Shown: one piece after another, positions 7,650 through 64,000 of the stretch
How positions within the stretch are numbered: position 1 is the first letter of the stretch
Layout: each line of letters starts with the position of its first letter
Assembly: GCA_965655095.1 (NCBI GenBank)
Contig: OZ296658.1
Span: forward strand, 17,484,001 to 17,548,000
Origin: Haplodiscus bocki
Taxonomy: Eukaryota
Reading direction: 5' to 3'
DNA: 64,000 bases
The notes under the pieces: generated by a model
What the model saw: only the letters and a program-made list of their open reading frames with translations
Databases searched by the model: none
Told to the model about the DNA's origin: nothing
Made by a program: the position numbers and the translations under genes

Positions 7650-10600
7650 AATATGTCATCCCAGCAAAATGATTGTCCACTACTTTTTCTGTTGGACGAC
7701 TGAAAAGGAATGCTCCCGGACAGGCTCACTCTGACGATTTCCTTTTATCGCTTACTGCTTTTTGGCTGAGAAAATCCAGTCAACGAACGTATGCTAGCTT
7801 GTTTTTCAACTGTAACAGTCTGTTTTCTGATCCTATTATTTCTCACCACAGTTCCTTTCTACGACAAAAGCTTGGCTCCTGGGCATGTTTAAACCGCCGA
7901 CTTCAGCGTTCCTTGGACTGTCCATAAAAACTGTGCTTTAACCAACAGCTAGGGGAGACTTCGACTTTACCTTTAAATTGTGTTCTATCACAAACGGAGC
8001 TCTCAGTAGAGTTTTTCGTTTGGCGGCAAAGCACTTCTCGCGAGAAGAATTAAAGTACCGACACCCTTTTATACCATAGCGCCATAAGGTACGGGGCTGT
8101 AATCAACTAGGTTACTGAAGCATAGCATTTGTTTTTGCCGACTGTGCCGTCGCATCAGGATTTCTCTCTGCGTTTTCTGAATTTACTAAAGTGGTGATGG
8201 TGCCGTTTAATCTGGAAGTGCCGATTGCCCCAAAGTCGGGACTGGTTGTAAGAAAGGAACTCCAGGCAACTGAGTTGACTTCAACTGAACTACAACTGTA
8301 CTTCTTCAGTTAATCACATGGGAAGTCGAATTATCGCGACGTTATTTGTGTTCAACGATAAAACAATTCTCTTTGAAGTCTGGAAGTGCCAAGTTCTGCA
8401 TATCCCATTTTGTGTATGGGTACACAGTTGAAAGCAACTTTTCAACTGGAGTTTGTCGTTTCACCTTCACAATATGTCATCCCAGCAAAATGATTGTCCA
8501 CTACTTTTTCTGTTGGACGACTGAAAAGGAATGCTCCCGGACAGGCTCACTCTGACGATTTCCTTTTATCGCATGCTGCTTTTTGGCTGAGAAAATCCAG
8601 TCAACGAACGTATGCTAGCTTGTTTTTCAACTGTAACAGTCTGTCTTCTGATCCTAATATTTCTCACCACAGTTCCTTTCTACGACAAAAGCTTGGCTCC
8701 TGGGCATGTTTGAACCGCCGACTTCAGCGTTCTTTGCACTGTCCATAAAAATTGTGCTTTAGCAAACTGAGCCACGGGAGACTTCGAGTTTACCTTTAGA
8801 TAGTGTTCTATCACAAACGGAGCTCTCAGTAGAGTTTTTTGTTTGGCGGCAAAGCACTTTTCGCGAGAAGAATTAAAGTAGTACCGACACCCTTTTATAC
8901 CATAGCGCCATAAAGTACGGGGCTGTAATCAACTGGGTTACTGAAACATAGCATTTGTTTTTGCAAACTGTGCCGTCGCATCAGGATTTCTCTCTGCGTT
9001 TCCTGACTTTACTAAAGTGGTGATGGTGCCGTTTAATCTGGAAGTGCCGATTGCCTCAAATTCGGGACTGGTTGTGAGAAAGGAACTCCAAGCAACTGAG
9101 TTGACTTCAACTGAACTACAACTGTACTTCTTCAGTTAATCACACGGGAAGTCGAATTATCGCGACGTTATTTGTGTTCAACGATAAAACAATTCTCTTT
9201 GAAGTCTGGAAGTGCCAAGTTCTGCATATCCCATTTTGTGTATGGGTACACAGTTGAAAGCAACTTTTCAACTGGAGTTTGTCGTTTCACCTTTACAGTA
9301 TGTCATCCCAGCAAAATGATTGTCCACTACTTTTTCTGTTGGACGACTGAAAAGGAATGCTCCCGGACAGGCTCACTCTGACGATTTCCTTTTATCGCAT
9401 ACTGCTTTTTGGCTGAGAAAATCCAGTCATTGAACGTATGCTAGCTTGTTTTTCAACTGTAACAGTCTGTCTTCTGATCCTAATATTTCTCACCACAGTT
9501 CCTTTCTACGACAAAAGCTTGGCTCCCGGGCATGTTTGAACCACCGACTTCAGCGTTCCTTGCACTGTCCAAAAAATTTGTGCTTTAGCAAACTGAGCCA
9601 CGGGAGACTTCCAGTTTACCTTTAGATAGTGTTTTATCACAAACGGAGCTCTCAGTAGAGTTTTTTGCTTGGCTGCAAAGCACTTCTCGCGAGAAGAATT
9701 AAAGTAGTACCGAAACCCTTTGATACCATAGCGCCATAAGGTACGGTGCTGTAATCAACTAGGTTACTGAACATAGCATTTGTTTTTGCAAACTGTGCCG
9801 TCGCATCAGGATTTCTCTCTGCGTTTTCTGACTTTACTAAAGTGGTGATGGTGCCGTTTAATCTGGAAGTGCCGATTGCCCCAAAGTCGGGACTGGTTGT
9901 AAGAAAGGAACTCGAATCAACTGAGTTGACTTCAACTGAACTACAACTGTACTTCTTCATTTAATCACACGGGAAGTCGAATTATCGCGACGTTATTTGT
10001 GTTCAACGATAAAACATTTCTCTGTGAAGTCTGAAAGTGCCAACTTCCGCATATCCCAAAATTTCTATTGGTACGCTGTTGGAAACAACTCTTCAACTGA
10101 ATTTTTCGTGTCACCATTACCATATATCATCCCAGCAAAAATGATTGTCCACTACTTTTTCTGTTGGACGACTGAAAAGGAATGCTCCCGGACAGGTTCA
10201 CTCTGACGATTTCCTTTTATCGCATACTGCTTTTTGGCTGAGAAAATCCAGTCAACGAACGTATGCTAGCTTGTTTTTCAACTGTAACAGTCTGTCTTCT
10301 GATCCTAAAATTTCTCAACACAGTTCATTTCTACGACAAAAGCTTGGCTCCTGGGCATGTTTGAACCACCGACTTCAGCGTTCCTTGCGCTGTCCATAAA
10401 ATTTGTGCTTTAGCAAACTGAGCCACGGGAGACTTCCAGTTTACCTTTAGATAGTGTTTTATCACAAACGGAGCTCTCAGTAGAGTTTTTTGTTTGGCTG
10501 CAAAGCACTTTTCGCGAGAAGAATTAAAGTAGTACCGAAACCCTTTGATACCATAGCGCCATAAGGTACGGTGCTGTAATCAACTAGGTTACTGAACATA

Positions 10601-13600
10601 GCATTTGTTTTTGCAAACTGTGCCGTCGCATCAGGATTTCTCTCTGCGTTTTCTGACTTTACTAAAGTGGTGATGGTGCCGTTTAATCTGGAAGTGCCGA
10701 TTGCCCCAAAGTCGGGACTGGTTGTAAGAAAGGAACTCGAATCAACTGAGTTGACTTCAACTGAACTACAACTGTACTTCTTCATTTAATTACACGGGAA
10801 GTCGAATTATCGCGACGTTATTTGTGTTCAACGATAAAACATTTCTCTGTGAAGTCTGGAAGTGCCAAGTTCTGCATATCCCATTTTGTGTATGGGTACA
10901 CAGTTGAAAGCAACTTTTCAACTGGAGTTTGTCGTTTCACCTTCACAATATGTCATCCCAGCAAATTGATTGTCCACTACTTTTTCTGTTGGACGACTGA
11001 AAAGGAATGCTCCCGGACAGGCTCACTTTGACGATTTCCTTTTATCGCATACTGCTTTTTGGCTGAGAAAATCCAGTCAACGAACGTATGCTAGCTTGTT
11101 TTTCAACTGTAACAGTCTGTCTTCTGATCCTAAAATTTCTCAACACAGTTCATTTCTACGACAAAAGCTTGGCTCCTGGGCATGTTTGAACCGCCGACTT
11201 CAGCGTTCCTTGCACTGTCCATAAAAACTGTGCTTTAACCACCAGGTACGGGAGACTTCGTCTTTACCTTTAAATTGTGTTCTATCACAAACGGAGCTCT
11301 CAGTAGAGTTTTTCGTTTGGCGGCAAAGCGCATCTCGCGAGAAGAATCAAAGTACCGACACCCTTTGATACCATAGCGCCATAAGGTACGGGGCTGTAAT
11401 CAACTAGGTTACTGAAGCATAGCATTTGTTTTTGCAAACTGTGCCGTCGCATCAGGATTTCTCTCTGCGTTTTCTGACTTTACTAAAGTGGTGATGGTGC
11501 TGTTGAATCTGGAAGTGCCGATTGCCCCAAAGTCGGGACTGGTTGTAAGAAAGGAACTCCAAGCAACTGAGTTGACTTCAATTGAACTACAACTGTACTT
11601 CTTCAGTTAATCACACGGGAAGTCGAATTATCGCGACGTTATTTGTGTTCAACGATAAAACATTTCTCTGTGAAGTCTGGAAGTGCCAAGTTCTGCATAT
11701 CCCATTTTGTGTATGGGTACACAGTTGAAAGCAACTTTTCAACTGGAGTTTGTCGTTTCACCTTCACAATATGTCATCCCAGCAAAATGATTGTCCACTA
11801 CTTTTTCTGTTGGACGACTGAAAAGGAATGCTCCCGGACAGGCTCACTTTGACGATTTCCTTTTATCGCATACTGCTTTTTGGCTGAGAAAATCCAGTCA
11901 ACGAACGTATGCTAGCTTGTTTTTCAACTGTAACAGTCTGTCTTCTGATCTTAATATTTCTCACCACAGTTCCTTTCTACGACAATAGCTTGGCTCCCGG
12001 GCATGTTTGAACCGCCGACTTCAGCGTTCTTTGCACTGTCCATAAAAAATGTGCTTTAGCCAATTGAGCTACGGGAGACTTCGATTTTACCTTTAGATAG
12101 TGTTCTGTCACAAACGGAGCTCTCAGTAGAGTTTTTTGTTTGGCGGCAAAGCGCTTTTCGCGAGAAGAATTAAAGTAGTACCGACACCCTTTGATACCAT
12201 AGCGCCATAAGGTACGGGGCTGTAATCAACTAGGTTACTGAAGCATAGCATTTGTTTTTGCAAACTGTGCCGTCGCATCAGGATTTCTCTCTGCGTTTTC
12301 TGACTTTACTAAAGTGGTGATGGTGCTGTTGAATCTGGAAGTGCCGATTGCCCCAAAGTCGGGACTGGTTGTAAGAAAGGAACTCCAAGCAACTGAGTTG
12401 ACTTCAATTGAACTACAGCTGTACTTCTTCAGTTAATCACACGGGAAGTCGAATTATCGCGACGTTATTTGTGTTCAACGATAAAACATTTCTCTGTGAA
12501 GTCTGGAAGTGCCAAGTTCTGCATATCCCATTTTGTGTATGGGTACACAGTTGAAAGCAACTTTTCAACTGGAGTTTGTCGTTTCACCTTCACAATATGT
12601 CATCCCAGCAAAATGATTGTCCACTACTTTTTCTGTTGGACGACTGAAAAGGAATGCTCCCGGACAGGCTCACTTTGACGATTTCCTTTTATCGCATACT
12701 GCTTTTTGGCTGAGAAAATCCAGTCAACGAACGTATGCTAGCTTGTTTTTCAACTGTAACAGTCTGTCTTCTGATCCTAATATTTCTCACCACAGTTCCT
12801 TTCTACGACAAAAGCTTGGCTCCTGGGCATGTTTGAACCGCCGACTTCAGCGTTCCTTGCACTGTCCATAAAAACTGTGCTTTAGCAAACTGAGCTACGG
12901 GAGACTTCGACTTTTCCTTTAAATTGTGTTCTATCACAAACGGAGCTCTCAGTAGAGTTTTTCGTTTGGCGGCAAAGCACATCTCGCGAGAAGAATTAAA
13001 GTACCGACACTCTTTTATACCATAGCGCCATAAGGTACGGGGCTGTAATCAACTAGGTTACTGAAACATAGCATTTGTTTTTGCAAACTGTGCCGTCGCA
13101 TCAGGGTTTCACACTGCGTTTTTTTGACTCTACTATAGTGGTGATGGTGACGTTTAATCTGGAAGTGCCGATTACCCCATGTTCGGGACTGGCTGTAAGA
13201 AAGGAATTCCGGGCAACTGAGTTGACTTCAACTGAACTACAACTGTACTTCTTCAGTTAATCACCAGGGAAGTCGAATTATCGCTACTTTTTTTGTGTTC
13301 AACAGGAAAGCAATTCTCTGTGAAGTCTGAAAGTGCCAACTTCCGCATATCCCAAAATTTCTATTGGTACGCTGTTGGAAACAACTCTTCAACTGAATTT
13401 TTCGTGTCACCTTTACAATATGTCATCCCAGCAAATTGATTGTCCACTACTTTTTCTGTTGGACGACTGAAAAGGAATGCTCCCGGACAGGCTCACTTTG
13501 ACGATTTCCTTTTATCGCATACTGCTTTTTGGCTGAGAAAATCCAGTCAACGAACGTATGCTAGCTTGTTTTTCAACTGTAACAGTCGGTCTTCTGATCC

Positions 13601-15060
13601 TAATATTTCTCACCACAGTTCCTTTCTACGACAAAAGCTTGGCTCCTGGGCATGTTTGAACCGCCGACTTCAGCGTTCCTTGCACTGTCCATAAAAACTG
13701 TGCTTTAGCAAACTGAGCTACGGGAGACTTCGACTTTTCCTTTAAATTGTGTTCTATCACAAACGGAGCTCTCAGTAGAGTTTTTCGTTTGGCGGCAAAG
13801 CGCATCTCGCGAGAAGAATCAAAGTACCGACACCCTTTTATACCATAGCGCCATAGGGTACGGGGCTGCAATCAACTAGGTTACTGAAACATAGCATTTG
13901 TTTTTGCAAACTGTGCCGTCGCATCAGGGTTTCACACTGCGTTTTCTGACTCTACGAAAGTGGTGATGGTGACGTTTAATCTGGAAGTGCCGATTACCCC
14001 ATGTTCGGGACTGGCTGTAAGAAAGGAATTCCGGGCAACTGAGTTGACTTCAACTGAACTACAACTGTACTTCTTCAGTTAATCACCAGGGAAGTCGAAT
14101 TATCGCTACTTTTTTTGTGTTCAACAGGAAAGCAATTCTCTGTGAAGTCTGAAAGTGCCAACTTCCGCATATCCCAAAATTTCTATTGGTACGCTGTTGG
14201 AAACAACTCTTCAACTGAATTTTTCGTGTCACCATTACCATATATCATCCCAGCAAAAATGATTGTCCACTACTTTTTCTGTTGGACGAAAGAAAAGGAA
14301 TGCTCCCGGACATGCGCACTCTGTCGATTTCCTTTTAACGCAAACTGCCCATTGGTTCAGAAGATCTAACCAACGAAGGTATGCTAGCTTGTTTTTCAAC
14401 TGTAATAATCTGTCTTCTGATCGTAATATATCTTACCACAGTTTCTTTCTACTACAAAAGCTTGGCTCCTGGGCATGTTTTAACCGCCGACTTCAGCGTT
14501 CTTTGCACTGTCCATAAAAAATGTGCTTTAGCCAACTGAGCTACGGGAGACTTCGAGTTTACCTTTAGGTAGTGTTCTATCACAAACGGAGCTCTCAGTA
14601 TAGTTTTTCGTTTGGCGGCAAAGCACTTCTCGCGAGAAGAATTAAAGTACCGACACCCTTTTATACCATAGTGCCATAAGGTACGGGGCTGTAATCAACT
14701 GAGTTGCTGAAACATGGCATTTGTGTCCTGCAAACTGTGCCACTGCATCAGGATTTTTCTCTCCGTTTTCTGACCTTACTAAAGTGGTGATGGTGCCGTT
14801 CAGTCTGGAAGTGCCGATTGCCCCAAATGCGGGACTGGTTGTAAGAAAGGAAATACAAGCAACTGAGTTGCATTCAACTGAACTACAACTGTACTTCTTC
14901 AGTTAATCACACGGGAAGTCGAATTATCGCTACGTTTTTTGTGTTCAACAGGAAAGCAGTTCTCTGTGAAGTCTGGAAGTGCCAACTTGCGCATATCCCA
15001 TACAGTCTGAGTACGCTGTTGAAAGCAAGTCTTCCACCCGATTTCATCGTGTCACCTTTA
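7650..15060 (-). repeat. Domain A: nine ~821-826-bp pentameric monomers, all tRNA subunits degenerate
   Basis: Equivalent positions at 7673, 8494, 9320, 10145, 10970, 11791, 12617, 13440 and 14263. The best subunit keeps GGTTCAAAC in most copies but has disrupted acceptor and anticodon arms. Confidence 0.92.
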
Positions 15061-18000
15061 CAGTATGTCATCACCGCAAATAGGTTCTGCACGACCTTTT
15101 CTGTTGGACAGATAAAAAGTAATGCTCCAGGACAGACGCACTCTGTCGGTTTCCTTTTATCGCAAACTGTTTTTTGGTTCGGAAGATCTAATCAACGAAG
15201 GTATGCTAGCTTGTTTTTCAACTGTAACAGTCTGTCTCTTGATCATAACATTTCTCGCCACAGTTTCTTTCTACGAAAATCTGTGGCTCCTGGACAGGTT
15301 CGAACTGCCGACTTCAGCATTACCTGTACTGTCTATATGTGGGATGCTGGAACCAACTGAGTTACGGGAGATTTCAATTTCACCTCCCTTTCTGTTCTGT
15401 CGCAAACGGAGTTCTTAATAGAGACTTTTGTTGGGCAGCAAAGCACTTCTCGCGGGAGGAATTGAAGTACCGACATCCACATTTACCATTGTGCTAGAAC
15501 GAATGGCGCTGTAACCAACTGAGCTACTGAATCGTAGCGTGTGTTTTCTACAAACTGTGCCATCGCATCAGGGTTTTCTCTATGTTTCCTTGCTTTACTA
15601 AAAAGGTGATGGTGCCGGTCAATTTGGAAAAACAAATTATCCCAAATTCCGAACTGTCCGTAAGTTAAAAGTTTAATTCAATTGAGTTGAGTTCAAGTGG
15701 ACCATAATCCTACTTGTGCACTCAAACAAATCGGAAGTCTAACTATCACTCGGTTTTTTGTGCCGAACGGGAAAACAATTCTGACAAGAAGTAGTGAATT
15801 GCCAACTGCGGCACCTCTCAAACTGTCTATCGTTACGCCGTTGCATCCGTGTCTTCTACTGGAGGTTATTGTGTAAGGTTTAGAATCTGTCACTCTCTAA
15901 AAGCATCTTCCATTACCTGTTCTTTTCGGTGAATAAAAGGTGTTGCCCCCAGTAAGGCTGATCCTGTCGATTTCCTTTCATCGTGTACTGCCTATTGGTA
16001 CGAAAGATCCGACCAACGAGGGTACGCTATCTTTTTTCAACTGATACACTCTGTCCCTTGCTTATCACATTTCTCACCACAGTTTCTTCCTTCACAAAAA
16101 GTGTTGCTCCCGGGCAGGTTTACCGACTTCCGCATATCTTGTAATGTCTAAATGAGCGATGCTTTAACTCTTTAGGCTCGGGAAGATTTGAAAAGTTTCT
16201 CTTCCTTGTGTCCTCCATTTCCTTGTATGTTCGGTAACCGAAAGGTGTTGTCCTGGTCCGGCCGACCTTGCCGACTTCCTTTCATCGCATACTGCCTATT
16301 GACTGGTGCGAAAATCCGACCAACGGGGGTACGCCAGCTTTTTTCAATTTTAACAGTGTCCCTGATTATCACATTTCTCACCACAGTTACTTCATTTGGA
16401 AAAGTGTTGCTCCTGGACAGATTCGAACTGCTAAATTCCGCATACCTTGTACTGTCGATAACTACGGTTCTTTGACCTACTGAGCTATGGGAGCGTGGAC
16501 AGTTATCCCTACTTTGTGTTCTATGCGAAACGAAGTTCTCTGTAGACTTTTCTGTTTGCCGATGAAGTACTTCTCTTGAGAAGAATCGAAGTATTGACAT
16601 CCACATATACCATACTGCCGATAGGTAAAGCGCTGTAATGAACTGAGCAAACGAAACGTACGGCTTTTTCTACAAGCGGCCATCGCATCAGGATTTTCCT
16701 CTACGTTTTCTGGCTTGTCTAAAAAGGTTATGGTGCCGGTCAATCTGAACGTGCTGATTGTCCCAAATTCGGAACTGTCTGTAAGTAAAGAGCTTAATGC
16801 AATTGGGATGAGTTCAACTGGACCGCAACCCTACTTTTACATCCAGTCAAATTGGAGTTCTAACTATCGCTCGGTTTTTTGTTCTGAACGGGAAAACAAT
16901 TCTGACTGTTTTCGCAGAGAGATCGCAAATTGCCAACTTTGACACATCTCAAACTGTCTATCGGTACGCCAATGTATGCTAGTGTTCAATTGGAGGTTGA
17001 TGTGTGACCTGTAGAACCTGTTACGCGTTAAATGATTCTTACATTAAATTATCTGTTCTTCAACCGAATAGGATTTCTCCGGGATGGCTCAAAATGTCAA
17101 GTTCTTTCTGTCTCAGACTGCCTTTTGGAACGGGGATCTCACCAATGGAGCTATGGAGGCTCCACATTTAATTGTTACTTTCTATCTCTTCATTGTCACA
17201 AATCTTATAACAGTTTAAGTGTTGTTTTCAGAAGGTGATGCTTTCAGGCACGCTCGAATTGCCAACTTCAGCATGGTTCAAATTGTCTATCGTTACGCTG
17301 TCGCATGCGACTCTTCAACTGGAGGTTGATGTGTAACGTTTAGAATCTGTCACACTGCGAAGACGTCCTCCATTTCCTTCTATGTTCGGTAACTGGAAGG
17401 TGTTGTCCTGGTCCGACTGACCGTGCCGATTTCCTTTCATCGCATACTGCCTATTGACTGGTGCGAAAATCCGACCAACGGGGGTACGCTAGTTGTTTTC
17501 AACGGTTACAGTCTGTCACCTGATTATCACATTTCTCACCACAGTTCTTTTCATCACAAAAAGTGTTGCTCCCGGGCTTGTTCGAACTGTCGACTTAAGC
17601 TTATGCTGTTTTGTCTATAAGTACGGCGCTCTAAGCAACTGAGTTACTGGAGCTTGGCATGATATCCTTACAATAAGTTCTCTCGCGTTTGAAATTGTCA
17701 CTAAAGTTTCTGTGCTTAGTGATGAAGCACAGCGTTAAAAAATTTATCACGGAAAAGCTAAAACGGCCGAAATCCGCCTCTACTACCTCTACTATATTGC
17801 ACATCTTAGACTGTCTATAGGTACACCGTTGTATGCGAGTCTTCAACTGCAGGTTGACATGTAACGTTTAGAATCTGTCGCACTGCGAAAACGTCCTCCA
17901 TTTCCTTGTATGTTCGGTAACCGAAAGGTGTTGTCCTGGTCCGGCCGACCTTGCCGACTTCCTTTCATCGCATACTGCCTATTGACTGGTGCGAAAATCC

Positions 18001-22150: not shown

Positions 22151-22191
22151 ATCACATTTCTCACCACAAATCCTTTCATCACAAAAAGTGT

Positions 22192-24682: not shown

Positions 24683-24687
24683 AAAAA
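24683..24687 (-). terminator. Pol III oligo(T) terminator (representative; same position after the other intact copies)
   Basis: Minus strand ...GGGAGCA ACAC TTTTT GTG. Confidence 0.8.
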
Positions 24688-24691
24688 GTGT

Positions 24692-49377: not shown

Positions 49378-49464
49378 TGCTCCCGGGCAGGTTCGAACTG
49401 CAGACTTCCGCATATCTCGTACTGTCTATAAGTACGGTACTCTAACCAACTGAACTACGGGAGC
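49378..49464 (-). pseudogene. tRNA-Ile(UAU) variant (G49T, wobble D-stem, terminator TATTT)
   Basis: 3' half matches the 48521 copy; D arm matches the 43143 copy (GTTC/GAGT), suggesting a recombinant. Confidence 0.6.
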
Positions 49465-51172: not shown

Positions 51173-51259
51173 TGCTCCCGGGCAGGTTCGAACTGCAGAC
51201 TTCCGCACATCTCGTATTGTCTATACGTACGGTGCTCTAACCAACTAAGCTACGGGAGC
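51173..51259 (-). pseudogene. tRNA-Ile(UAU) pseudogene
   Basis: Invariant U33 changed to G, plus G49T and other changes. Confidence 0.75.
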
Positions 51260-52970: not shown

Positions 52971-53057
52971 TGCTCCCGGGCAGGTGCAAACTGCCGACTT
53001 CCGCATATCTCGTACTGTCTATAAGTACGGTGCTCTAACCAACTGAGCTTCGGGAGC
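52971..53057 (-). pseudogene. tRNA-Ile(UAU) pseudogene
   Basis: T-loop TTTGCAC (B box lost) and U8 changed to A. Confidence 0.75.
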
Positions 53058-54763
53058 TTGGAATGATTTGCCTGTTTTGTGTTCTATCAGAAACAGAGTT
53101 CTCAGTAGACTTTTCTGTTTGGTGGCGAAGCACTTCTCTCGAGAAGAATCGAAGTGCTGGCATCCACATATACGATACTGCCATTAGGAACGGGGCTGTA
53201 ATCAACTGAGTCCTTGAAAAACAACGCGTTCTTTACAAGCGGTAATCGCGTTTGGATTTTCCTCTACGTTTTCTGACTTGTCTAAAAGGTAATGGTGCCG
53301 GTCAGTCTGAAAGTGCCGGTTGTCCCAAACCAGGTACTGACTGTAAGTAAGGACTTTAATACAAGTGAGTTAAGTTCAAGTGGACCACAACGCTGTTTTT
53401 ACATTTAGCCAAGTAGGAAGTATAATTATCGTTATGTTTTTCGTGCTGAAAGGGGAGCAAATCTCACAAGTGGTCGCGAAGTGCCAACTTCTACTGAACT
53501 ACAACTCTACTTCTTCAGTTAGTCCCAAGGGAAGTCTAATTATCGCTGCGTATTTTGTGTTGATCGAGTAAACAACTCGCAGGGGAAGTCTCGCAGTGCC
53601 TTTCTCCTCATATCACTTACCATCTAGGGGTTCGGCGTAGTAGGAATTTCTTCAAATGGAGGTTGACGTGAAACTCTTACAATCTGTCGAACCCGAAGGG
53701 ATATTCCACTAATTTGTCTGTTCCGTAACCGAAAAACACTGCCGCGGGACGGGCCCCAAACGGCTGAGTTCCTTTTCTCCAAATACCTTATTGTTACGGA
53801 GGATTTAACCATTGGAGCTGTGCAAGCTCGTTTTTTTTAACTCTTGCACTCTGTTTCCTGGTTCTTCCATTTCGCAGCACAGTTTCTTCAAAAAAAGAAT
53901 TACTCCCTGAAGGTTCGAACTGCCGACTACCGCAGATTTTGTACTGTCGGTAAGTACGGTGCTCTAACCAAATGACCTACAGGACCTTGAAAATTTTCAT
54001 TTACTTTGTGTTCTGTCGCAAACGGAGTTCTCGACGCAATTTTTTATTGTTTGGCAGCAAAGCACTTCTCGCGAGAAGAATTGAAGTACCGACATCAACA
54101 CATACCATAATGCCAATAGGTACGGATCTGTACTCAGCTGAGTTACTGAATTGTAACGAGTGTTTTCTACAAACTGTGCCATCGCATCATGATTTTCCTC
54201 TACGTTTTGTGACTTGTCTAAAAAGGTTATGGTGCCGGTCAATCTGAAAATGCCGATTTTCCCAAAATCGGAACTGTTTGTAAGTAAGGAGTTTTTTACA
54301 AATGAGTTGAAGACAAGTGGACCACAACCCTATTTTTACATTTAGTCAAATCGGATATATAACTGTCGTTAGATTTTTCGTGCTGAAAAAGAAAACAATT
54401 CTTAAAATTATCGGGAAGTGCCAACTTCTCCACATCTCAGACTGTCTATAGGTACACCGTTGTACTGCACATCTCAGACTGCCTATGGGTACACCGTTGT
54501 ATCCGAATCTCCGACTGGAGGTTGACATGTAACGTTTACAATCTGTCGCACTGCGGAAACGTCGTCCATCACCTTTTCTGTTCGGTGACCGAATGGTGTT
54601 GTTTTGTTCCTGCTGATCCTGCCGATTTCCTTTCATCGCATACTGCCTATTGATTCGTACGAAAGATCCGACCAGAGAGGGTACGCTGGTTGTTTTCAAC
54701 AGTTACAGTCTGTCTCCTGGTAATCACATTTCTCACCACAGTTTCTTCCTTCACAAAAAGTGT

Positions 54764-54850
54764 TGCTCCCGGGCAGGTTCGAACCGCCGACTTCCGCATA
54801 TCTCGTACTGTCTATAAGTACGGTGCTCTAACCAACTGAGCTACGGGAGC
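54764..54850 (-). tRNA. tRNA-Ile-TAT: tRNA-Ile(UAU) with 13-nt intron, intact (one G.U pair in the T-stem)
   Basis: T-stem GGCGG/CTGCC, B box GGTTCGAACC, T5 terminator present. Confidence 0.88.
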
Positions 54851-55234
54851 TTGGAATGATTTGCCTGTTTTGTGTTCTATCAGAAACAGAGTTCTCAGTA
54901 GACTTTTCTGTTTGGTGGCGAAGCACTTCTCTCGAGAAGAATCGAAGTGCTGGCATCCACATATACGATACTGCCATTAGGAACGGGGCTGTAATCAACT
55001 GAGTCCTTGAAAAACAACGCGTTCTTTACAAGCGGTCATCGCATCTGGATTTTCCTCTACGTTTTCTGACTTGTCTAAAAATTTTATGGTGCCGGTCAGT
55101 CTGAAAGTGCCGATTGTCCCAAATGAGGTACTGACTGTAAGTAAGGACTTTAATACAAGTGAGTTAAATTCAAGTGGACCACAACGCTGTTTTCACACTT
55201 AGCCAAATAGGAAGTATGTTTATAGTTAGGCGTT

Positions 55235-58200
55235 TTGCCTATTGGAACGAAAGATCCGACCAACGGTGATTCGCGAGCTTTTTTCCACTTTAACAGTCTG
55301 TCCCCTGATTATCACATTTCTCTCCACAGTTTCTTCCTTCACAAAAAGTGTTGCGTCGGGCAGCTTAGAACTGGCGACTTTAGTTTATCTTGTACTGTCA
55401 AAAAGTACGGTGCTCTAACCAACTGAGCTACGGGATCCTGAAAAATTTTATTTACTTTGTGTTCTGTCGGGAACGGAGTTCTCGATGGAGTTTTTGTGTT
55501 CGCTGGCAAAGCACTTCTCGCCAGAAGAATTGAAATACCGACATCCACATATACCATATTGCCAATAGGTACGGTCCTGTAATCAACTAAGGTACTGAAA
55601 CAAAACGTGTGTTTTCTACTAACTGTCCCATCGCTTCATGATTTTTCTGAGTTTTCTAACTTTACTGAATAGTTAGTGCTACCGTTCAATCTGAAAGTGC
55701 TGATTGTCCCAAATTCGGAACTGCCTGTAAGTTGGAAGTTCTATAGAATTGAGTTCAGTTCAAGTGGACCATACCTTTACTTCTATATTCAGTCAAATCG
55801 GAGGTATAATTATCGGTTGGTTTTTTATGGTGAAAATGAGAACAAATCTCACATGAAGTTGACGTGTAACCTCTACAACCTGTTGCACGGTAGACGTTTC
55901 TTACATTACTTTATCCTTTCTATAACCGAAAAGGAACGCTGCAGGATAGGCTCAGAGTGCCATAATCTTTCTGTTCCAGACTGTCTTTTGATACGGGAGA
56001 TGTAACCAACGGGGCTACGCAAGATCCACATTTATTTGTTACTCTCTGTATCTTCATTATCACATATTTTAGTACAGTTCCTGTGTTGTTTTCAAAAAGT
56101 TATGCTTTCAGGCACGCTCGATTTGCCAACTCCAGCTTGTCGCAAACTGTCCAAGGGCATGCCGTTGTATGCAACTCTTCAACTGGATGTCGACATGTTA
56201 CGTTCGCAATCTGTCACACTGCAAAGGCATCCTCGTTTACCTTGTCTGTTCGCTAACGGAAAGGAATTGCTTCTGGACAGGATCACCTTGTCGACTTCTT
56301 TTCATCGCGTACTGCCTATTGCTACGAAAGATCCGACCAACGAGGCTTCGCTCGCTTTTTTCTACTTTAACAAACTGTCCCCTGATTATCACAATTCTCT
56401 CCACAGTTTCTTCCTTCACAAAAAGTGTTGCGCCGGGCAGCTTAGAACTAGCGACTTTAGTATATCTTGTACTGTCAATAAGTACGGCGCTCTAAACAAC
56501 TGAGCTATGGGAGCCTGAAAAAATTCATTTACTTTGCGTTCTATCACAAACGGAGTTCTCGATGAGGTTTTTGTGTTCGCTTGCAAAGCACTTCTCGCCA
56601 GAAGAATTGAAATAACGACATCCACATATACCATATTGCCAATAAGTACGGTCCTGTAATCAACTGAGGTACTGAAACAAAACGTGTGTTTTCTACAAAC
56701 TGTCCCATCGCTTCATGATTTTTTTCTAAGTTTTCTAACTTTACTGAATAGTTAGTGGTACCGTTCAATCTGAAATTGCTGATTGTCCCAAATTCGGAAC
56801 TGTCTCTAAGTAGGAAGTTCTAAAGAATTAGGTTGAGTTCAAGTGGACCACAAATATACTTCCACATTCTGTCAAATCGGAAGATAACTATCGGTAGATT
56901 TTTTTGTGCTGAAAAGGAAAGCAAATCTCACATGAAATTGACGTGTAACCTCTACAACCTGTTGGACGGTAGACGTTTCTTACATTACTTTATCCTTTTT
57001 ACAACCGAAAAGGAACGCTGCAGGACAGGCTCAGAGTGCCATGTTCTTCCTGTTTCAGACTGTTTTTTGATACGGGAGATCTAACCAACGGAGCTACGCA
57101 AGATCCACCTTTTTTGTTAATCTCTGTATCTTCATTATCAGATTCTTTTGTTCAGTTTCTGTGTTGTTCTCAAAAAGTTATGCTTTCAGGCACGCTCGAT
57201 TTGCCAACTCCAGCTTGTCGCAAACTGTCCATCGACATGCCGTTGTTTGCAACTCTTTAACTGGATGTCGACATGTAACGTTCGCAATCTGTCACACTGC
57301 AAAGGCATCCTCGTTTACCTTGTCCGTTCGGTAACGGAAAGGAGTTGCTTCTAGACAGGGTCACCCTGTCGACTTGCTTTCATCGCGTACGGCCTATTGG
57401 TACGAAACATCCGACCAACGAGGCTTCGCTCGCTTTTTTCTACTTTAACAAACTGTCCCCTGATTATCACAATTCTCTCCACAGTTTCTTCCTTCACAAA
57501 AAGTGTTGCGCCGGGCAGCTTAGAACTGGCGACTTTAGTATATCTTGTACTGTCAATAAGTACGGCGCTCTAAACAACTGAGCTACGGGAGCCTGGAAAA
57601 CTTCATTTACTTTGCGTTCTGTCACAAACGGAGTTCTCGATGAGGTTTTTGTGTTCGCTTGCAAAGCACTTCTCGCCAGAAGAATTGAAATACCGACATC
57701 CACATATACTATATTGCCAATAGGTACGGTCCTGTAATCAACTGAGGTACTGAAACAAAACGTGTATTTTCTACAAACTGTCCCATTGCTTCATGATTTT
57801 TTTCTAAGTTTTCTAACTTTACTGAATAGTTAGTGGTACCGTTCAATCTGAAATTGCTGATTTTCCCAAATTCGGAACTGCCTGTAAGTAGCAAGTTCTA
57901 TAGAATTGAGTTGAGTTCAAGTGGACTACACCTTTACTTCTATATTCAGTCAAATCGGAAGTGTAATTGTCGGTTGGTTTTTTATGGTGAAAATGAGAAC
58001 AAATCTCACATGAAGTTGACGTGTAACCTCTACAACCTGTTGCACGGTAGACGTTTCTTACATTACTTTATCCTTTCTATAAGCGAAAAGGAACGCTGCA
58101 GGACAGGCTCAGAGTGCCATAATCTTTCTGTTCCAGACTATCTTTTGATACGGGAGATGTAACCAACGGGGCTACGCAAGATCCACATTTATTTGTTACT

Positions 58201-61200
58201 CTCTGTATCTTCATTATGACATATTTTAGTACAGTTCCTGTGTTGTTTTCAAAAAGTTATGCTTTCAGGCACGCTCAATTTGCCAACTCCAGCTTGTCGC
58301 AAGCTGTCCATCGGCATGCCGTTGTATGCAACTCTTCAACTGGATGTCGACATGTAACGTTCGCAATCTGTCACACTGCAAAGGCATCCTCGTTTACCTT
58401 GTCCGTTCGGTAACGGAAAGGAGTTGCTTCTAGACAGGGTCACCCTGTCGACTTGCTTTCATCGCGTACGGCCTATTGGTACGAAACATCCGACCAACGA
58501 GGCTTCGCTCGCTTTTTTCTACTTTAACAAACTGTCCCCTGATTATCACAATTCTCTCCACAGTTTCTTCCTTCACAAAAAGTGTTGCGCCGGGCAGCTT
58601 AGAACTGGCGACTTTAGTATATCTTGTACTGTCAATAAGTACGGCGCTCTAAACAACTGAGCTACGGGAGCCTGAAAAACTTCATTTACTTTGCGTTCTG
58701 TCACAAACGGAGTTCTCGATGAGGTTTTTGTGTTCGCTTGCAAAGCACTTCTCGCCAGAAGAATTGAAATACCGACATCCACATATACTATATTGCCAAT
58801 AGGTACGGTCCTGTAATCAACTCAGGTACTGAAACAAAACGTGTATTTTCTACAAACTGTCCCATTGCTTCATGATTTTTTTCTAAGTTTTCTAACTTTA
58901 CTGAATAGTTAGTGGTACCGTTCAATCTGAAATTGCTGATTGTCCCAAATTCGGAACTGTCTGTAAGTAGGAAGTTCTATAGAATTAGGTTGAGTTCAAG
59001 TGGACCACAAATTTACTTCCACATTCAGTCAAATCGGAAGTATAACTATCGGTAGATTCTTTTGTGCAGAAAAGGAACGCAAATCTCACATGAAATTGAC
59101 GTGTAACCTCTACAATCTGTTGGATGGTAGACGTTTCTTACATTACTTTATCCTTTTTACAACCGAAAAGGAACGCTGCAGGACAGGTTCAGAGTGCCAT
59201 GTTCTTCCTGTTTCAGACTGTTTTTTGATACGGGAGATCTAACCAACGGAGCTACGCAAGATCCACCTTTTTTTTAATCTCTGTATCTTCATTATCAGAT
59301 TCTTTTGTTCAGTTTCTGTGTTGTTCTCAAAAAGTTATGCTTTCAGGCACTCTCGAAATGCCAACTTCAGCATGTCGCAAACTGTCCATCGGCATGCCGT
59401 TGTTTGCAACTCTTTAACTGGATGTCGACATGTAACGTTCGCAATCTGTCACACTGCAAAAGCGTCTTGCATTACCTTGTCCTTTCGGTAATGGAAAGGA
59501 GTTGCTTCTGGACAGGATCAGCCTTTTTATTTTTGTTTTCATGGCGTACTGCCTATTGGTACGAAAGATCCGACCAACGAGGGTTCGCGATCTTTTTTCC
59601 ACTTTAACAGTTTGTCCCCTGATTATCACAATTCTCTCCACAGTTTCTTCCTTCACAAAAAGTGTTGCGCCGGGCAGCTTAGAACTGGCGACTTTAGTAT
59701 ATCTTGTATTGTCAAAAAGTACGGTGCTCTAACCAACTGAGCTACGGGTTCCTGAAAAATTTCATTTACTTTGTGTTCTGTCGGGAACGGAGTTCTCGAT
59801 GGAGTTTTTGTGTTCGCTGGCAGAGCACTTCTCGCCAGAAGAATTGAAATACCTACATCCACATATACCATATTGCCAATAGGTACGGTCCTGTAATCAA
59901 CTGAGGTACTGAAACAAAACGTGTGTTTTCTACAAACTGTCCCATCGCTTCATGATTTTTTTCTAAGTTTTCTAACTTTACTGAATAGTTAGTGGTACCG
60001 TTCAATCTGAAATTGCTGATTTTCCCAAATTCGGAACTGCCTGTAAGTAGCAAGTTCTATAGAATAGAGTTGAGTTCAAGTGGACTACACCTTTACTTCC
60101 ACATTCAGTCAAATCGGAAGTATAACTATCGGTAGATTCTTTTGTGCAGAAAAGGAACGCAAATCTCACATGAAGTTGACGTGTAACCTCTACAACCTGT
60201 TGCACGGTAGACCTTTTTTACAATACTTTATCCTTTCTATAACCGAAAAAAAACGCTGCAGGAAAGGCTCAGAGTGCCATAATCTTTCTGTTCCAGACTG
60301 ACTTTTGATACGGGAGATGTAACCAACGGAGCTACGCAAGATCCACATTTATTTGTTACTCTCTGTATCTTCATTATCACATATTTTAGTACAGTTCCTG
60401 TGTTGTTTTAAAAAAGTTATGCTTCCAGGCACGCTCGATTTGCCAACTCCAGCTTGTCGCAAACTGTCCAAGGGCATGCCGTTGTATGCAACTCTTCAAC
60501 TGGATGTCGACATGTTACGTTCGCAATCTGTCACACTGCAAAGGCATCCTCGTTTACCTTGCCTGTTCGCTAACGGAAAGGAGTTGCTTCTGGACAGGAT
60601 CACCTTGTCGACTTCCCTTCATCGCGTACTGCCTATTGCTACGAAAGATCCGGCCAACGAGGCTTCGCTTGCTTTTTTCTACTTTAACAAACTGTCCCCT
60701 GATTATCACAATTCTCACCACAGTTTCTTCCTTCACAAAAAGTGTTGCGCCGGGCAGCTTAGAACTGGCGACTTTAGTATATCTTGTACTGTCAATAAGT
60801 ACGGCGCTCTAAACAACTGAGCTACGGGAGCCTGAAAAACTTCATTTACTTTGCGTTCTGTCACAAACGGAGTTCTCGATGAGGTTTTTGTGTTCGCTTG
60901 CAAAGCACTTCTCGCCAGAAGAATTGAAATACCGACATCCACATATACTATATTGCCAATAGGTACGGTCCTGTAATCAACTGAGGTACTGAAACAAAAC
61001 GTGTGTTTTTCACAAACTGTCCCATCGCTTCATGATTTTTTTCTAAGTTTTCTAACTTTACTGAATAGTTAGTGGTACCGTTCAATCTGAAATTGCTGAT
61101 TGTCCCAAATTCTGAACTGTCTGTAAGTAGGAAGTTCTATAGAAATAAGTTGAGTTCAAGTGGACCAAAAATTTACTTCCACATTCAGTCAAATCGGAAG

Positions 61201-64000
61201 TATAACTATCGGTGGATTTTTATGTGCTGAAAAGGAAAGCAAATCTCACATGAAATTGACGTGTAACCTCTACAACCTGTTGGACGGTAGACGTTTCTTA
61301 CATTACTTTATCCTTTTTACAACCGAAAAGGAACGCTGCAGGACAGGTTCAGAGTGCCATGTTCTTCCTGTTTCAGACTGTTTTTTGATACGGGAGATCT
61401 AACCAACGGAGCTACGCAAGATCCACCTTTTTTATTAATCTCTGTATCTTCATTATCAGATTCTTTTGTTCAGTTTCTGTGTTGTTCTCAAAAAGTTATG
61501 CTTTCAGGCACTCTCGAAATGCCAACTTCAGCATGTCGCAAACTGTCCATCGGCATGCCGTTGTATGCAAATCTTTAACTGGATGTCGACATGTAACGTT
61601 CGCAATCTGTCACACTGCAAAGGCATCCTCGTTTACCTTGTCCGTTCGGTAATGGAAAGGAGTTGCTTCTGGACAGGATCAGCCTTTTTATTTTTGTTTT
61701 CATGGCGTACTGCCTATTGGTACAAAAGATCCGACCAACGAGGGTTCGCGATCTTTTTTCCACTTTAACAGTCTGTCCCCTGATTATCACAATTCTCTCC
61801 ACAGTTTCTTCCTTCACAAAAAGTGTTGCGCCGGGCAGCTTAGAACTGGCAACTTTAGTATATCTTGTACTGTCAAAAAGTACGGTGCTCTAACCAACTG
61901 AGCTACGGGATCCTGAAAAATTTCATTTACTTTGTGTTCTGTCGGGAACGGAGTTCTCGATGGAGTTTTTGTGTTCGCTGGCAAAGCACTTCTTGCCAGA
62001 AGAATTGAAATACCGACATCCACATATACCATATTGCCAATAGGTACGGTCCTGTAATCAACTAAGGTACTGAAACAAAACGTGTGTTTTCTACTAACTG
62101 TCCCATCGCTTCATGATTTTTCTGAGTTTTCTAACTTTACTGAATAGTTAGTGCTACCGTTCAATCTGAAAGTGCTGATTGTCCCAAATTCGGAACTGCC
62201 TGTAAGTAGGAAGTTCTATAGAATTGAGTTGAGTTCAAGTGGACCACACCTTTACTTCTGTCTTCAGTCAAATCGGAAGTATAACTATCGGTTGGTTTTT
62301 TATGCTGAAAATGAGAACAAATCTCACATGAAGTTGACGTGTAACCTCTACAACCTGTTGCACGGTAGACGTTTCTTACATTACTTAATCCTTTCTATAA
62401 CCGAAAAGGAACGCTGCAGGATAGGCTCAGAGTGCCATAACCTTTCTGTTCCAGACTGTCTTTTGATACGGGAGATGTAACCAACGGGGCTACGCAAGAT
62501 CCACATTTATTTGTTACTCTCTGTATCTTCATTATCACATTTTTTAGTACAGTTCCTGTGTTGTTTTCAAAAAGTTATGCTTTCAGGCACGCTCGATTTG
62601 CCAACTCCAGCTTGTCGCAAACTGTCCATCGACATGCCGTTGTTTGCAACTCTTTAACTGGATGTCGACATGTAACGTTCGCAATCTGTCACACTGCAAA
62701 GGCATCCTCGTTTACCTTGTCCGTTCGGTAACGGAAAGGAGTTGCTTCTAGACAGGGTCACCCTGTCGACTTGCTTTCATCGCGTACGGCCTATTGGTAC
62801 GAAACATCCGACCAACGAGGCTTCGCTCGCTTTTTTCTACTTTAACAAACTGTCCCCTGATTATCACAATTCTCTCCACAGTTTCTTCCTTCACAAAAAG
62901 TGTTGCGCCGGGCAGCTTAGAACTGGCGACTTTAGTATATCTTGTACTGTCAATAAGTACGGCGCTCTAAACAACTGAGCTACGGGAGCCTGAAAAACTT
63001 CATTTACTTTGCGTTCTGTCACAAACGGAGTTCTCGATGAGGTTTTTGTGTTCGCTTGCAAAGCACTTCTCGCCAGAAGAATTGAAATACCGACATCCAC
63101 ATATACTATATTGCCAATAGGTACGGTCCTGTAATCAACTGAGGTACTGAAACAAAACGTGTGTTTTTCACAAACTGTCCCATCGCTTCATGATTTTTTT
63201 CTAAGTTTTCTAACTTTACTGAATAGTTAGTGGTACCGTTCAATCTGAAATTGCTGATTGTCCCAAACTCGGAACTGTCTGTAAGTAGGAAGTTCTATAG
63301 AATTAGGTTGAGTTCAATTGGACCACAAATTTGTTTCCACATTCAGTCAAATTGGAAGTATAACTATCGGTAGATTTTTTTGTGCTGAAAAGGAAATCAA
63401 ATCTCACATGAAATTGACGTGTAACCTCTACAACCTGTTGGACGGTAGACGTTTCTTACATTACTTTATCCTTTTTACAACCGAAAAGGAACGCTGCAGG
63501 ACAGGCTCAGAGTGCCATGTTCTTCCTGTTTCAGACTGTTTTTTGATACGGGAGATCTAACCAACGGAGCTACGCAAGATCCACCTTTTTTATTAATCTC
63601 TGTATCTTCATTATCAGATTCTTTTGTTCAGTTTCTGTGTTGTTCTCAAAAAGTTATGCTTTCAGGCACTCTCGAAATGCCAACTTCAGCATGTCGCAAA
63701 CTGTCCATCGGCATGCCGTTGTATGCAAATCTTTAACTGGATGTCGACATGTAACGTTCGCAATCTGTCACACTGCAAAGGCATCCTCGTTTACCTTGTC
63801 CGTTCGGTAACGGAAAGGAGTTGCTTCTAGACAGGGTCACCCTGTCGACTTGCTTTCATCGCGTACGGCCTATTGGTACGAAACATCCGACCAACGAGGC
63901 TTCGCTCGCTTTTTTCTACTTTAACAAACTGTCCCCTGATTATCACAATTCTCTCCACAGTTTCTTCCTTCACAAAAAGTGTTGCGCCGGGCAGCTTAGA
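55235..64000 (-). repeat. Domain E: ~1080-bp units (6 subunits plus one truncated), alternating a/b as a ~2160-bp dimer; all tRNA copies are pseudogenes
   Basis: tRNA-like copies recur every ~1077-1081 bp from 55352. The T-loop reads TTCTAAG, the anticodon stem is broken and the acceptor 3' strand is 1 nt short. Abrupt deletion junction at ~55235. Confidence 0.9.

What the first reader, a model, noticed from the sequence alone, without database searches (positions are those of the whole stretch)
7650..64000. A 56-kb satellite built entirely from one intron-containing tRNA-Ile(UAU) gene at a ~164-bp period
Seen: what looks like 0.8-1.8-kb satellite monomers with a tRNA inside is actually wall-to-wall tRNA homologues. 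Each ~822-bp monomer is five ~164-bp subunits, each colinear with the 87-nt gene including its intron (subunit 24855-24941 matches at 59/87 ungapped), plus a spacer with a relic of the T-run terminator. Retention of intron and flanks means DNA-level tandem amplification, not retroposition as in SINEs. Established: Ile-UAU is typically a minor, intron-containing isoacceptor in eukaryotes, and many centromeric satellites have roughly mononucleosome-length monomers arranged in higher-order repeats. Inference: a head-to-tail tRNA gene array is caught converting into satellite DNA with alpha-satellite-like architecture, possibly with a chromatin role (centromeric, pericentromeric or TFIIIC/Pol III organising).
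Basis: partly seen in the sequence, partly recalled or inferred. Interest (0 to 1): 0.9.

Follow-up and report, generated by a model that had tools for sequence, protein, structure and literature searches.

The report
Tandem array of decayed tRNA-Ile genes
A 60-kb stretch of this animal's chromosome is made of about 365 head-to-tail copies of one intron-containing isoleucine tRNA gene, about five of them still intact; this genome holds other tRNA arrays of similar build, so it is a tRNA gene cluster of a known kind, with no sign of a centromere-like role.

Summary
Window 7690-64000, running on to about 68140 outside the window (60.4 kb), is an uninterrupted one-strand array of ~164-bp units. 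Each unit is homologous to an 87-nt tRNA-Ile(UAU) gene with its 13-nt intron, a 77-bp spacer and a T-run relic.

- A profile of the gene finds 345 hits, all on the minus strand, at a median spacing of 164 bp. Shuffled sequence gives none at E<0.01.
- Five units form an 822-bp higher-order repeat. It arose once: the five subunit classes are each one clade in all array domains.

The array is a single locus, about 0.004% of a 1.5-Gb genome. CpG is not depleted, and the dead units show no extra retention of the A or B box. About five units are intact genes, and in their monomers the gene is about 10-fold less diverged than the rest (p about 1e-4). Apart from one solo gene 3 Mb away, no other copy of this gene was found.

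Arg, Lys and Thr arrays in this genome are also one-strand tandem tRNA arrays; the Arg and Lys ones clearly hold decayed units. Earlier first-reader notes of this scan describe Trp and Met arrays elsewhere in this genome.

Best reading: a tRNA gene cluster evolving by unequal crossing-over, of the cnidarian kind surveyed in Nematostella. A chromatin role has no support.

The parts
7690..64000 (-). Tandem array of ~164-bp tRNA-Ile(UAU)-derived units. It continues about 4.1 kb beyond the window, to about C11:17552140, for 60.4 kb and about 365 units in all.
   Evidence: nhmmer finds 345 one-strand hits at a median spacing of 164 bp. BLAST cover is 92%. The extension is seen in L001.
32330..33151 (-). 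Reference 822-bp pentamer (HOR unit). Subunits S1-S5 start, in tRNA sense, at 33151, 32987, 32822, 32653 and 32492.
   Evidence: Local alignment offsets are 0/164/329/498/659, with scores 139/19/41/35/65 against a null of 16.9 +/- 2.4. Five-way alignment.
24692..24778 (-). Intact tRNA-Ile(UAU) gene with a 13-nt intron: best copy, 59.2 bits. Identical copies lie at 26373-26459, 28054-28140 and 39679-39765.
   Evidence: Rfam alignment, variant table, fold. A T5 run lies 5-9 nt downstream.
54764..54850 (-). Probably intact gene copy with one change, which turns a T-stem A-U pair into G-U. 56.0 bits.
24855..24941 (-). The A-box region is intact, the B box is degraded, and it does not fold as a cloverleaf.
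   Evidence: 59/87 ungapped matches. Fold z-score -0.8.
7690..15371 (-). Domain D1: ten 821-826-bp pentamers, homogenised among themselves, 65-76% identical to the core. All S1 genes are dead (19-24 changes in those alignable without gaps).
15372..22191 (-). Domain D2: irregular, rearranged pentamers with decayed S1 units.
22192..39765 (-). Domain D3: the young core, with 822- and 859-bp monomers forming a 1681-bp dimer HOR. Copies are 99.9-100% identical. The 859 form carries a 37-bp internal duplication in S3. Most of the Rfam-scoring genes lie here.
39766..55356 (-). Domain D4: dimers of 1732-1796 bp, each pairing one monomer that has a tRNA-scoring S1 with one whose S1 is dead.
55357..64000 (-). 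Domain D5: monomers of 1076-1081 bp (about 6.5 units). All S1 genes are dead (14-16 changes).
6965..7649 (+). End of a young, very abundant transposon that abuts the left edge of the array. It is not part of the array.
   Evidence: 1735 first-look candidates in the genome. The best 40 are 97-100% identical and all stop at query position 685-693, the last base of the transposon (window 7649) or a few bases beyond.

Best explanation
This is a single-locus tandem array of tRNA-Ile(UAU) genes.

Proposed history (inferred):
1. One intron-containing gene with its 77-bp spacer and terminator (164 bp in all) was duplicated head to tail at the DNA level.
2. The copies diverged.
3. A block of five units (822 bp), in which only unit S1 was kept as a working gene, was re-amplified by unequal crossing-over or replication slippage.
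4. Later rounds produced 859-, 1079-, 1681- and ~1794-bp repeat forms and a young homogenised core flanked by older, dead domains.

Function (inferred): supply of tRNA-Ile(UAU), which reads AUA codons, from about five intact Pol III genes. The roughly 360 decayed units act only as spacer. They are kept free of transposon insertions by rapid array turnover, not by selection on their own sequence.

Shown here: the homology, the order of events, the single locus and the lineage-specific conservation. Inferred: transcription, the recombination mechanism and selection.
For: - Homology of all units to the gene, intron included.
- The pentamer arose once. Classes S1-S5 are each one side of a branch with UFBoot 95-100 across all five domains, and the order S1-S5 is kept everywhere.
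- Ancestral (domain-balanced) consensus sequences of S2-S5 are closer to the gene than present copies: 53-62 of 87. They also match an independent solo gene at 47-59 of 87.
- Only one array of this gene and this monomer was found in the genome, plus one solo gene at C11:20570241-20570327. The solo gene is 90% identical, has the same intron, shows a compensatory T-stem change and has unrelated flanks.
- In monomers with an intact gene, the gene differs from the ancestral consensus at 1-2 of 87 sites, against about 13% in the rest of the same monomers (Fisher p 9e-5 to 8e-4). In monomers with a dead S1 there is no such difference (p>0.1).
- Intact copies have a cloverleaf (acceptor, D and T arms in the fold; anticodon arm by the covariance-model alignment), A and B boxes and a T5 terminator.
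- Neighbouring HOR copies in the core are 99.9-100% identical and the edges are oldest, as unequal exchange predicts.
- The genome holds other one-strand, isoacceptor-specific arrays: Arg-UCG on C7 and Lys-UUU on C4 mix intact and decayed units; Thr on C11 is less clear.
- Very large tDNA clusters are reported for the cnidarian Nematostella (PMC2888827).
Against: - No expression data. No RNA run holds the sequence, and ordinary RNA-seq misses tRNAs anyway.
- Averaged over all copies, S1 genes are no more conserved between domains than S4 or S5 (0.258 against 0.25). Constraint is therefore seen only in the lineage of intact copies.
- The consensus used as 'ancestor' is itself built partly from those copies.
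- Most of the 27 Rfam-scoring copies carry stem-breaking or conserved-base changes, so few genes may work. The solo gene alone might meet demand.
- Genome searches score only the best candidates, so further Ile(UAU) genes elsewhere cannot be excluded.
Confidence: 0.72

Rival explanations
1. A neutral satellite. The array is a by-product of unequal exchange with no current function. All units, including the cloverleaf-competent ones, are silent or dispensable, and the solo gene supplies tRNA-Ile(UAU).
For: - About 98% of units are dead.
- There is no general constraint on S1 between domains.
- The solo gene scores as well as the best array copy: 58.5 against 59.2 bits.
- No RNA evidence.
Against: - The gene in intact-copy monomers is about 10-fold less diverged than the rest of the same monomers.
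- The best copies keep every stem, the boxes, the intron and the terminator, although the units around them have lost 30-45% of their gene positions.
- Intact copies sit in two differently diverged domains, D3 and D4.
Confidence: 0.17
2. A chromatin element. The array works as a centromeric or pericentromeric satellite, or as a TFIIIC/Pol III-bound organiser or insulator domain, with the ~164-bp unit phasing nucleosomes.
For: - The unit length is near one nucleosome repeat, with an HOR and layered architecture.
- Subunit S5 keeps a perfect A-box region, and S3 keeps a near-consensus B box in its consensus.
- No transposon lies inside 60 kb of a transposon-rich genome.
Against: - It is one 60-kb locus on a 92-Mb contig, with no copies elsewhere.
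- A second, unrelated tRNA array lies on the same contig, and others lie on other contigs with basic units of ~240 and ~260-305 bp.
- A and B boxes are not kept better than the intron or the stems in dead units.
- CpG o/e is 0.85-0.99.
- No other satellite lies within +/-80 kb, and a host-gene exon (CRAL_TRIO_2) lies about 41 kb away.
Confidence: 0.07
3. Retroposon- or transposon-derived repeat. The units descend from a tRNA-derived SINE, or from the internal tRNA-like arrays that other readers noted inside rolling-circle elements of this genome.
For: - A transposon end abuts the left edge of the array.
- Earlier unchecked notes describe Helentron-type elements with tRNA-like arrays in this genome.
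- tRNA-derived tandem repeats that arose by retroposition are known in the newt (cited in PMC12054243).
Against: - The intron is retained in all five classes, and the spacer and terminator were co-duplicated.
- There is no A-tail, there are no dispersed copies, and the locus is single.
- All 40 scored transposon copies stop within a few bases of window 7649, about 40 bp before the first recognisable array unit, so the array is not part of that element.
- No array remnant lies on the transposon's other side.
Confidence: 0.03

Closest known systems
Large tDNA clusters of cnidarians and teleosts (Nematostella vectensis: more than 17000 tDNAs, 89% clustered, clusters of 50 or more; zebrafish, stickleback). 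Bermudez-Santana et al. 2010, PMC2888827.
   Same: Same-strand runs of tRNA genes and pseudogenes less than 1 kb apart. Very many tRNA-like sequences in the genome (about 138000 first-look candidates here). Several large arrays per genome.
   Different: That survey reports mostly heterogeneous pairs in Nematostella and gives no repeat anatomy. Here each array holds a single isoacceptor, and the kb-scale repeat unit is shown to be a higher-order repeat of ancient short gene units.
Arabidopsis thaliana tandem tRNA arrays (27 Ser-Tyr-Tyr triplet units on chromosome 1, PMC2886086; tRNA-Cys 0.4-kb units, PMC10701932). From my own knowledge: the Xenopus 3.18-kb tRNA repeat and the Entamoeba tRNA arrays.
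   Same: DNA-level head-to-tail amplification of Pol III genes with their spacers. Multi-gene repeat units that evolve by unequal crossing-over.
   Different: Those units hold mostly intact genes. Here four of five genes in the unit are long dead, and about 98% of all units are pseudogenes.
tRNA-derived tandem repeats of amphibians (newt PolIII/TAN from tRNA-Glu by retroposition, Nagahashi et al. 1991; Xenopus OAX; Rana/PolIII), as cited in PMC12054243.
   Same: Tandem repeats whose monomer descends from a tRNA.
   Different: Those are thought to derive from retroposed or SINE-like copies and are multi-locus. Here the intron and flanks are retained, there is one locus, and live genes are included.
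Alpha satellite and other HOR satellites. 5S-rDNA arrays with higher-order organisation (Esox, PMC5437419). From my own knowledge: 5S-derived satellites such as PcP190 and 5SHindIII.
   Same: A basic unit of about 160-170 bp. Diverged basic units inside near-identical higher-order units. A young core and older flanks. Origin from a Pol III gene in the 5S cases.
   Different: No genomic abundance, no multi-chromosome distribution and no centromere evidence. Total size is 60 kb.

Membership tests
Eukaryotic nuclear tRNA-Ile(UAU) gene (Rfam RF00005) | Cloverleaf that scores at or above the family gathering score | tested here: met
   27 units score 35.3-59.2 bits against a gathering score of 29. 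About 338 other units fail.
Eukaryotic nuclear tRNA-Ile(UAU) gene (Rfam RF00005) | Anticodon UAU in a 7-nt loop, with the intron between positions 37 and 38 | tested here: met
   The covariance-model alignment gives loop C-U-U-A-U-A followed by 13 inserted nt. The solo paralogue has the same layout.
Eukaryotic nuclear tRNA-Ile(UAU) gene (Rfam RF00005) | Internal A and B boxes and a downstream T-run terminator | tested here: met
   Read directly from the intact copies: A-box region TAGCTCAGTTGG, T-loop GTTCGAACC, and TTTTT 5-9 nt after the gene.
Eukaryotic nuclear tRNA-Ile(UAU) gene (Rfam RF00005) | Transcribed, spliced and charged with isoleucine | not testable with these tools
   No RNA run holds the stretch.
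Tandem tRNA gene arrays / tDNA clusters | Same-strand tRNA genes and pseudogenes less than 1 kb apart, in a long run | tested here: met
   345 one-strand hits at a median spacing of 164 bp over 60 kb.
Tandem tRNA gene arrays / tDNA clusters | At least some members are intact genes under constraint | tested here: met
   Four identical copies plus one G-U variant. The gene differs at 1-2 of 87 sites against about 13% in the rest of the monomer. Function itself is untested.
Tandem tRNA gene arrays / tDNA clusters | Other such arrays in the same genome | tested here: met
   Arg-UCG, Lys-UUU and Thr arrays are one-strand tandem arrays of tRNA genes; the Arg and Lys arrays clearly hold decayed units between the genes.
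Satellite DNA with higher-order repeats (alpha-satellite-like) | Diverged basic units nested in near-identical higher-order units | tested here: met
   Subunits are 39-53% identical. HOR copies in the core are 99.9-100% identical. The five classes are monophyletic.
Satellite DNA with higher-order repeats (alpha-satellite-like) | High genomic abundance, or presence at many loci or chromosomes | tested here: not met
   All genome matches to the gene and to the rest of the monomer fall in this one array, plus one solo gene.
Satellite DNA with higher-order repeats (alpha-satellite-like) | Centromeric or heterochromatic location (CENP-A, H3K9me3, FISH) | not testable with these tools
   Indirect evidence only: CpG is not depleted, and no neighbouring satellite is present while a host exon lies about 41 kb away.
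tRNA-derived SINE / retroposon-derived tandem repeat | Derived from processed RNA: no intron, no gene flanks, dispersed copies, tail | tested here: not met
   The intron is retained in all five classes as well as the exons are. The spacer and terminator were co-duplicated. The locus is single.

The most novel reading that the evidence does not exclude
In this cnidarian much of the nuclear tRNA gene complement may be kept in isoacceptor-specific, satellite-like higher-order-repeat arrays. In these, a few live genes sit among hundreds of decayed copies. The arrays, dead units included, could then serve as Pol III/TFIIIC-bound chromatin domains (boundary or clustering elements) and not only as gene stores. 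This would explain their size, their one-strand order and their freedom from transposon insertions.
Probability: 0.08. Interest if true: 0.65.

Novelty: new member of a known kind. Interest (0 to 1): 0.35.

Why it matters
The locus gives an unusually clear step-by-step record of how a Pol III gene array evolves: from a short gene unit, to diverged units, to a pentamer higher-order repeat, to layered domains. One live gene per unit is kept by selection. The kb-scale repeat units of the Arg and Lys arrays in the same genome show the same nested build.

This matters for three things:
- annotating tRNA genes in cnidarian genomes, where counts are inflated by such arrays;
- models of birth-and-death and concerted evolution;
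- the general question of how genes seed satellite DNA.

It does not, on present evidence, reveal a new kind of chromatin element.

Tried and rejected
- ARAGORN without and with intron mode miscalls the gene as Leu(TAG), Leu(TAA), Leu(GAG) or Tyr(ATA). I used the Rfam alignment instead.
- Rfam at E<=10 on three monomers finds only the S1 units. The general tRNA model therefore cannot see the decayed units.
- Between-domain distances do not show general constraint on S1. The simple 'gene versus flank identity to a reference' table shows only a modest excess. I replaced both with a lineage test against the ancestral consensus.
- The look-up of sequencing runs gave four DNA-like runs of one study and no RNA run. 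Read laying on 22000-27900 gave only short, high-depth unitigs in two samples. These show that the repeat exists in independent samples, but nothing on structure or expression.
- I searched for an array remnant to the left of the flanking transposon and found none.
- Pfam on ten long flank ORFs gave one CRAL_TRIO_2 exon and one weak zinc finger. The rest had no match.
- Literature searches for a cnidarian tRNA satellite with Pol III terms found nothing. One search failed on a term-length rule.
- The N run at 4419-4618 was left untouched.
- Relatives of this animal could not be searched. The genome collections on hand hold bacteria, archaea, viruses and metagenomes.

Full report
WHAT IS THERE

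The window is G000:C11:17484001-17548000 of a 1.5-Gb animal assembly. Earlier agents of this scan took the animal for a coral; I did not check this.

Rfam finds 27 tRNA hits at or above the gathering score, all on the minus strand between 22192 and 54850. The covariance-model alignment of the best copy (24692-24778, 59.2 bits) gives:
- a 7-bp acceptor stem, a D arm and a T arm;
- anticodon stem CCGUA/UGCGG;
- anticodon loop C-U-U-A-U-A;
- 13 extra nucleotides after position 37.

This is a tRNA-Ile(UAU) gene with an intron in the canonical place. ARAGORN misreads it as Leu or Tyr.

THE 164-BP UNIT IS REAL

Autocorrelation over 7650-64000 peaks at lag 164 (0.293, against a background of 0.257 +/- 0.006) and at 329/330. 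These lie beneath the peaks at 822, 859, 1080, 1681 and 1794.

The shuffle null is 21.3 +/- 4.0, with a maximum of 35. Every other in-register offset gives 40-57 matches.

An nhmmer profile built from the 27 genes gives the following:
- 345 hits inside the array, none on the plus strand;
- 229 hits at E<0.01;
- a median spacing of 164 bp, with 290 of 344 spacings between 150 and 180 bp;
- in five shuffles, 2-8 hits and none at E<0.01;
- in the reversed sequence, no hit.

The five subunits of one monomer align along the whole gene, including the intron. They continue to align through a T-run relic and the spacer.

The five reference subunits cover 92% of the array by BLAST. The uncovered pieces are each one unit long, and there is no foreign insertion.

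The array is somewhat larger than stated. It runs from about 7690 to about 68140 in window terms, that is 60.4 kb and about 365 units. At its left edge it abuts the last base (7649/7650) of a young transposon with at least 1735 candidate copies. No array remnant lies beyond that element.

HISTORY

Classifying every unit against the five reference subunits gives the order S1-S2-S3-S4-S5 in every part of the array.

A maximum-likelihood tree of 74 units, sampled from five array domains, puts each class on one side of a branch with 95-100% bootstrap support. The class labels came from best BLAST match, but the positional order is independent support. The pentamer therefore arose once, before the array diversified. 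The 164-bp stage is much older: the classes are only 39-53% identical.

Domain-balanced consensus sequences of S2-S5 match the gene at 53-62 of 87 positions. They also match an independent solo paralogue at 47-59 of 87. At one intron site they share the solo gene's base and not that of S1.

In the dead units the intron is retained as well as the exons (0.67 against 0.54-0.69). Together with the co-duplicated spacer and terminator, this shows DNA-level duplication of a gene, not retroposition.

The domains are as follows:
- D1 (7.7-15.4 kb): ten 821-826-bp pentamers, 65-76% identical to the core, genes dead.
- D2: rearranged pentamers.
- D3 (22.2-39.8 kb): the young core of 822/859-bp monomers forming 1681-bp dimers, with copies 99.9-100% identical.
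- D4: dimers of 1732-1796 bp, each pairing a monomer with a tRNA-scoring S1 and one with a dead S1.
- D5: monomers of about 1079 bp with dead genes.

A young, homogenised centre with old edges is what unequal exchange produces. It also resembles the layered structure of centromeric satellites.

IS IT A GENE CLUSTER OR A SATELLITE?

Whole-genome searches with the gene, with the non-gene 735 bp of the monomer and with the solo gene find only two places: this array and one solo gene at C11:20570241-20570327. The solo gene scores 58.5 bits and is 90% identical. It has the same 13-nt intron, a compensatory T-stem change and unrelated flanks. The tool scores only the best candidates, so this is a lower bound.

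Among the S1 units, four are identical and canonical, and one more differs by an A-U to G-U change. The other one-change variants hit G19 or break a T-stem pair, and the rest carry 3-24 changes.

Averaged over all copies, S1 is no more conserved between domains than S4 or S5. Most S1 genes are therefore decaying freely.

The monomers that carry an intact gene behave differently. In them the gene differs from the inferred ancestral S1 at 1-2 of 87 sites, while the rest of the same monomers differ from their ancestral consensus at about 13% of sites (Fisher one-sided p 9e-5 to 8e-4). Monomers with a dead S1 show no such contrast (p>0.1).

I read this as purifying selection on a few live genes. 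Gene conversion confined to the gene is an alternative that I cannot exclude.

The best array copy folds with the acceptor, D and T arms, and the solo gene with the full pre-tRNA shape. A decayed S5 unit does not.

THE CHROMATIN IDEA

Nothing tested here supports it:
- The locus is single and makes up about 0.004% of the genome.
- A and B boxes are not kept better than other parts in dead units.
- CpG o/e is 0.85-0.99 in the array, against 0.78-1.01 in the flanks.
- No other satellite lies within 80 kb, and an exon with a CRAL_TRIO_2 domain lies about 41 kb to the right.

The nucleosome-length unit is also not general in this genome. An RF00005 search gives about 138000 first-look candidates, and its best hits fall in other one-strand arrays:
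- tRNA-Arg(UCG) on C7, spread over at least 100 kb. It has a 1431-bp unit of five ~260-305-bp subunits: two score as good genes, one scores near or below the Rfam gathering score, and two are detected only by the sequence profile.
- tRNA-Lys(UUU) on C4, spread over at least 200 kb. It has a ~240-bp basic unit and periods near 480, 968 and 1440 bp.
- tRNA-Thr on the same contig C11 at 32.1 Mb, with a period of about 755 bp; any decayed units there are much less clear.

First-reader notes of this scan also mention Trp and Met arrays; I did not check those. The Ile(UAU) array is thus one of a class of loci in this genome.

COMPARISON WITH WHAT IS KNOWN
- Very large tDNA clusters are on record for the cnidarian Nematostella (more than 17000 tDNAs, 89% clustered, clusters of 50 or more) and for some teleosts (PMC2888827).
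- Tandem tRNA arrays that evolve by unequal crossing-over are described in Arabidopsis (PMC2886086, PMC10701932).
- tRNA-derived tandem repeats that arose by retroposition are described in the newt and suggested in frogs (cited in PMC12054243).
- Higher-order organisation of a Pol III gene array is described for pike 5S rDNA (PMC5437419).

In the papers searched I found no description of a tRNA array dissected into a pentamer higher-order repeat of ancient intron-bearing gene units. The ingredients are all known, however. I therefore file it as a new member of a known kind.

VERDICT

The origin claim is confirmed. The architecture claim is confirmed. The claims 'converting into satellite' and 'chromatin role' are not supported.

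Most likely this is a working tRNA-Ile(UAU) gene cluster with about five live genes among about 360 dead copies (confidence 0.72). Expression was not testable: no RNA run holds the stretch, and the contigs laid on it were only short, high-depth unitigs from two samples.

Noticed in passing
window 6965-7649 (element body extends leftwards; N gap 4419-4618 inside it): Young, very abundant transposon ending exactly at the array edge. There are 1735 first-look candidates, and the best 40 copies are 97-100% identical. Many copies sit in same-strand pairs 6.4-7.8 kb apart on other contigs, which fits the chained elements that other agents described in this genome.
   Followed up: partly
L004:5241-5327 (+) = G000:C11:20570241-20570327: Solo tRNA-Ile(UAU) gene, 58.5 bits, with the same 13-nt intron. 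It differs from the array gene at nine positions, including a compensatory T-stem pair, and its flanks are unrelated to the array. It is the only copy found outside the array.
   Followed up: yes
L006 (G000:C7:23764001-23774000); hits spread over C7:23.68-23.78 Mb: tRNA-Arg(UCG) array with a 1431-bp repeat built of five same-strand subunits of about 260-305 bp: two score as good genes, one scores near or below the Rfam gathering score, and two are seen only with a sequence profile.
   Followed up: partly
L007, L009 (G000:C4:108121001-108131000, 108009001-108019000); hits spread over C4:107.93-108.14 Mb: tRNA-Lys(UUU) arrays with a basic unit of about 240 bp. Intact and decayed units make up repeats of about 480, 968 and 1440 bp.
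   Followed up: partly
L008 (G000:C11:32111001-32121000): tRNA-Thr array mixing UGU and AGU anticodons, with a period of about 755/1509 bp, on the same contig as the Ile array. Decayed units in the spacers are much less clear here.
   Followed up: partly
whole genome G000: An RF00005 search reports about 138000 first-look tRNA candidates (a rough count). This suggests a very large load of tRNA-like sequence, as reported for Nematostella.
   Followed up: no
window 24356-24429 and 12 further places listed: A 37-bp tandem duplication inside subunit S3, covering the anticodon-arm and intron homologue. It turns the 822-bp monomer into the 859-bp form and marks a monomer subfamily.
   Followed up: partly
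window 6186-6449 and 6612-6964: Tandem repeats of 130 bp x 2 and 49 bp x 7.2 inside the flanking transposon, just before its end.
   Followed up: no
L017:3628-4437 (+) = G000:C11:17591628-17592437: An open frame with a divergent CRAL/TRIO domain (E 2.4e-17), probably an exon of a host gene, about 41 kb right of the array.
   Followed up: no
L021, about G000:C11:17635142-17638000: A dinucleotide microsatellite of at least 2.9 kb, running off the fetched stretch.
   Followed up: no
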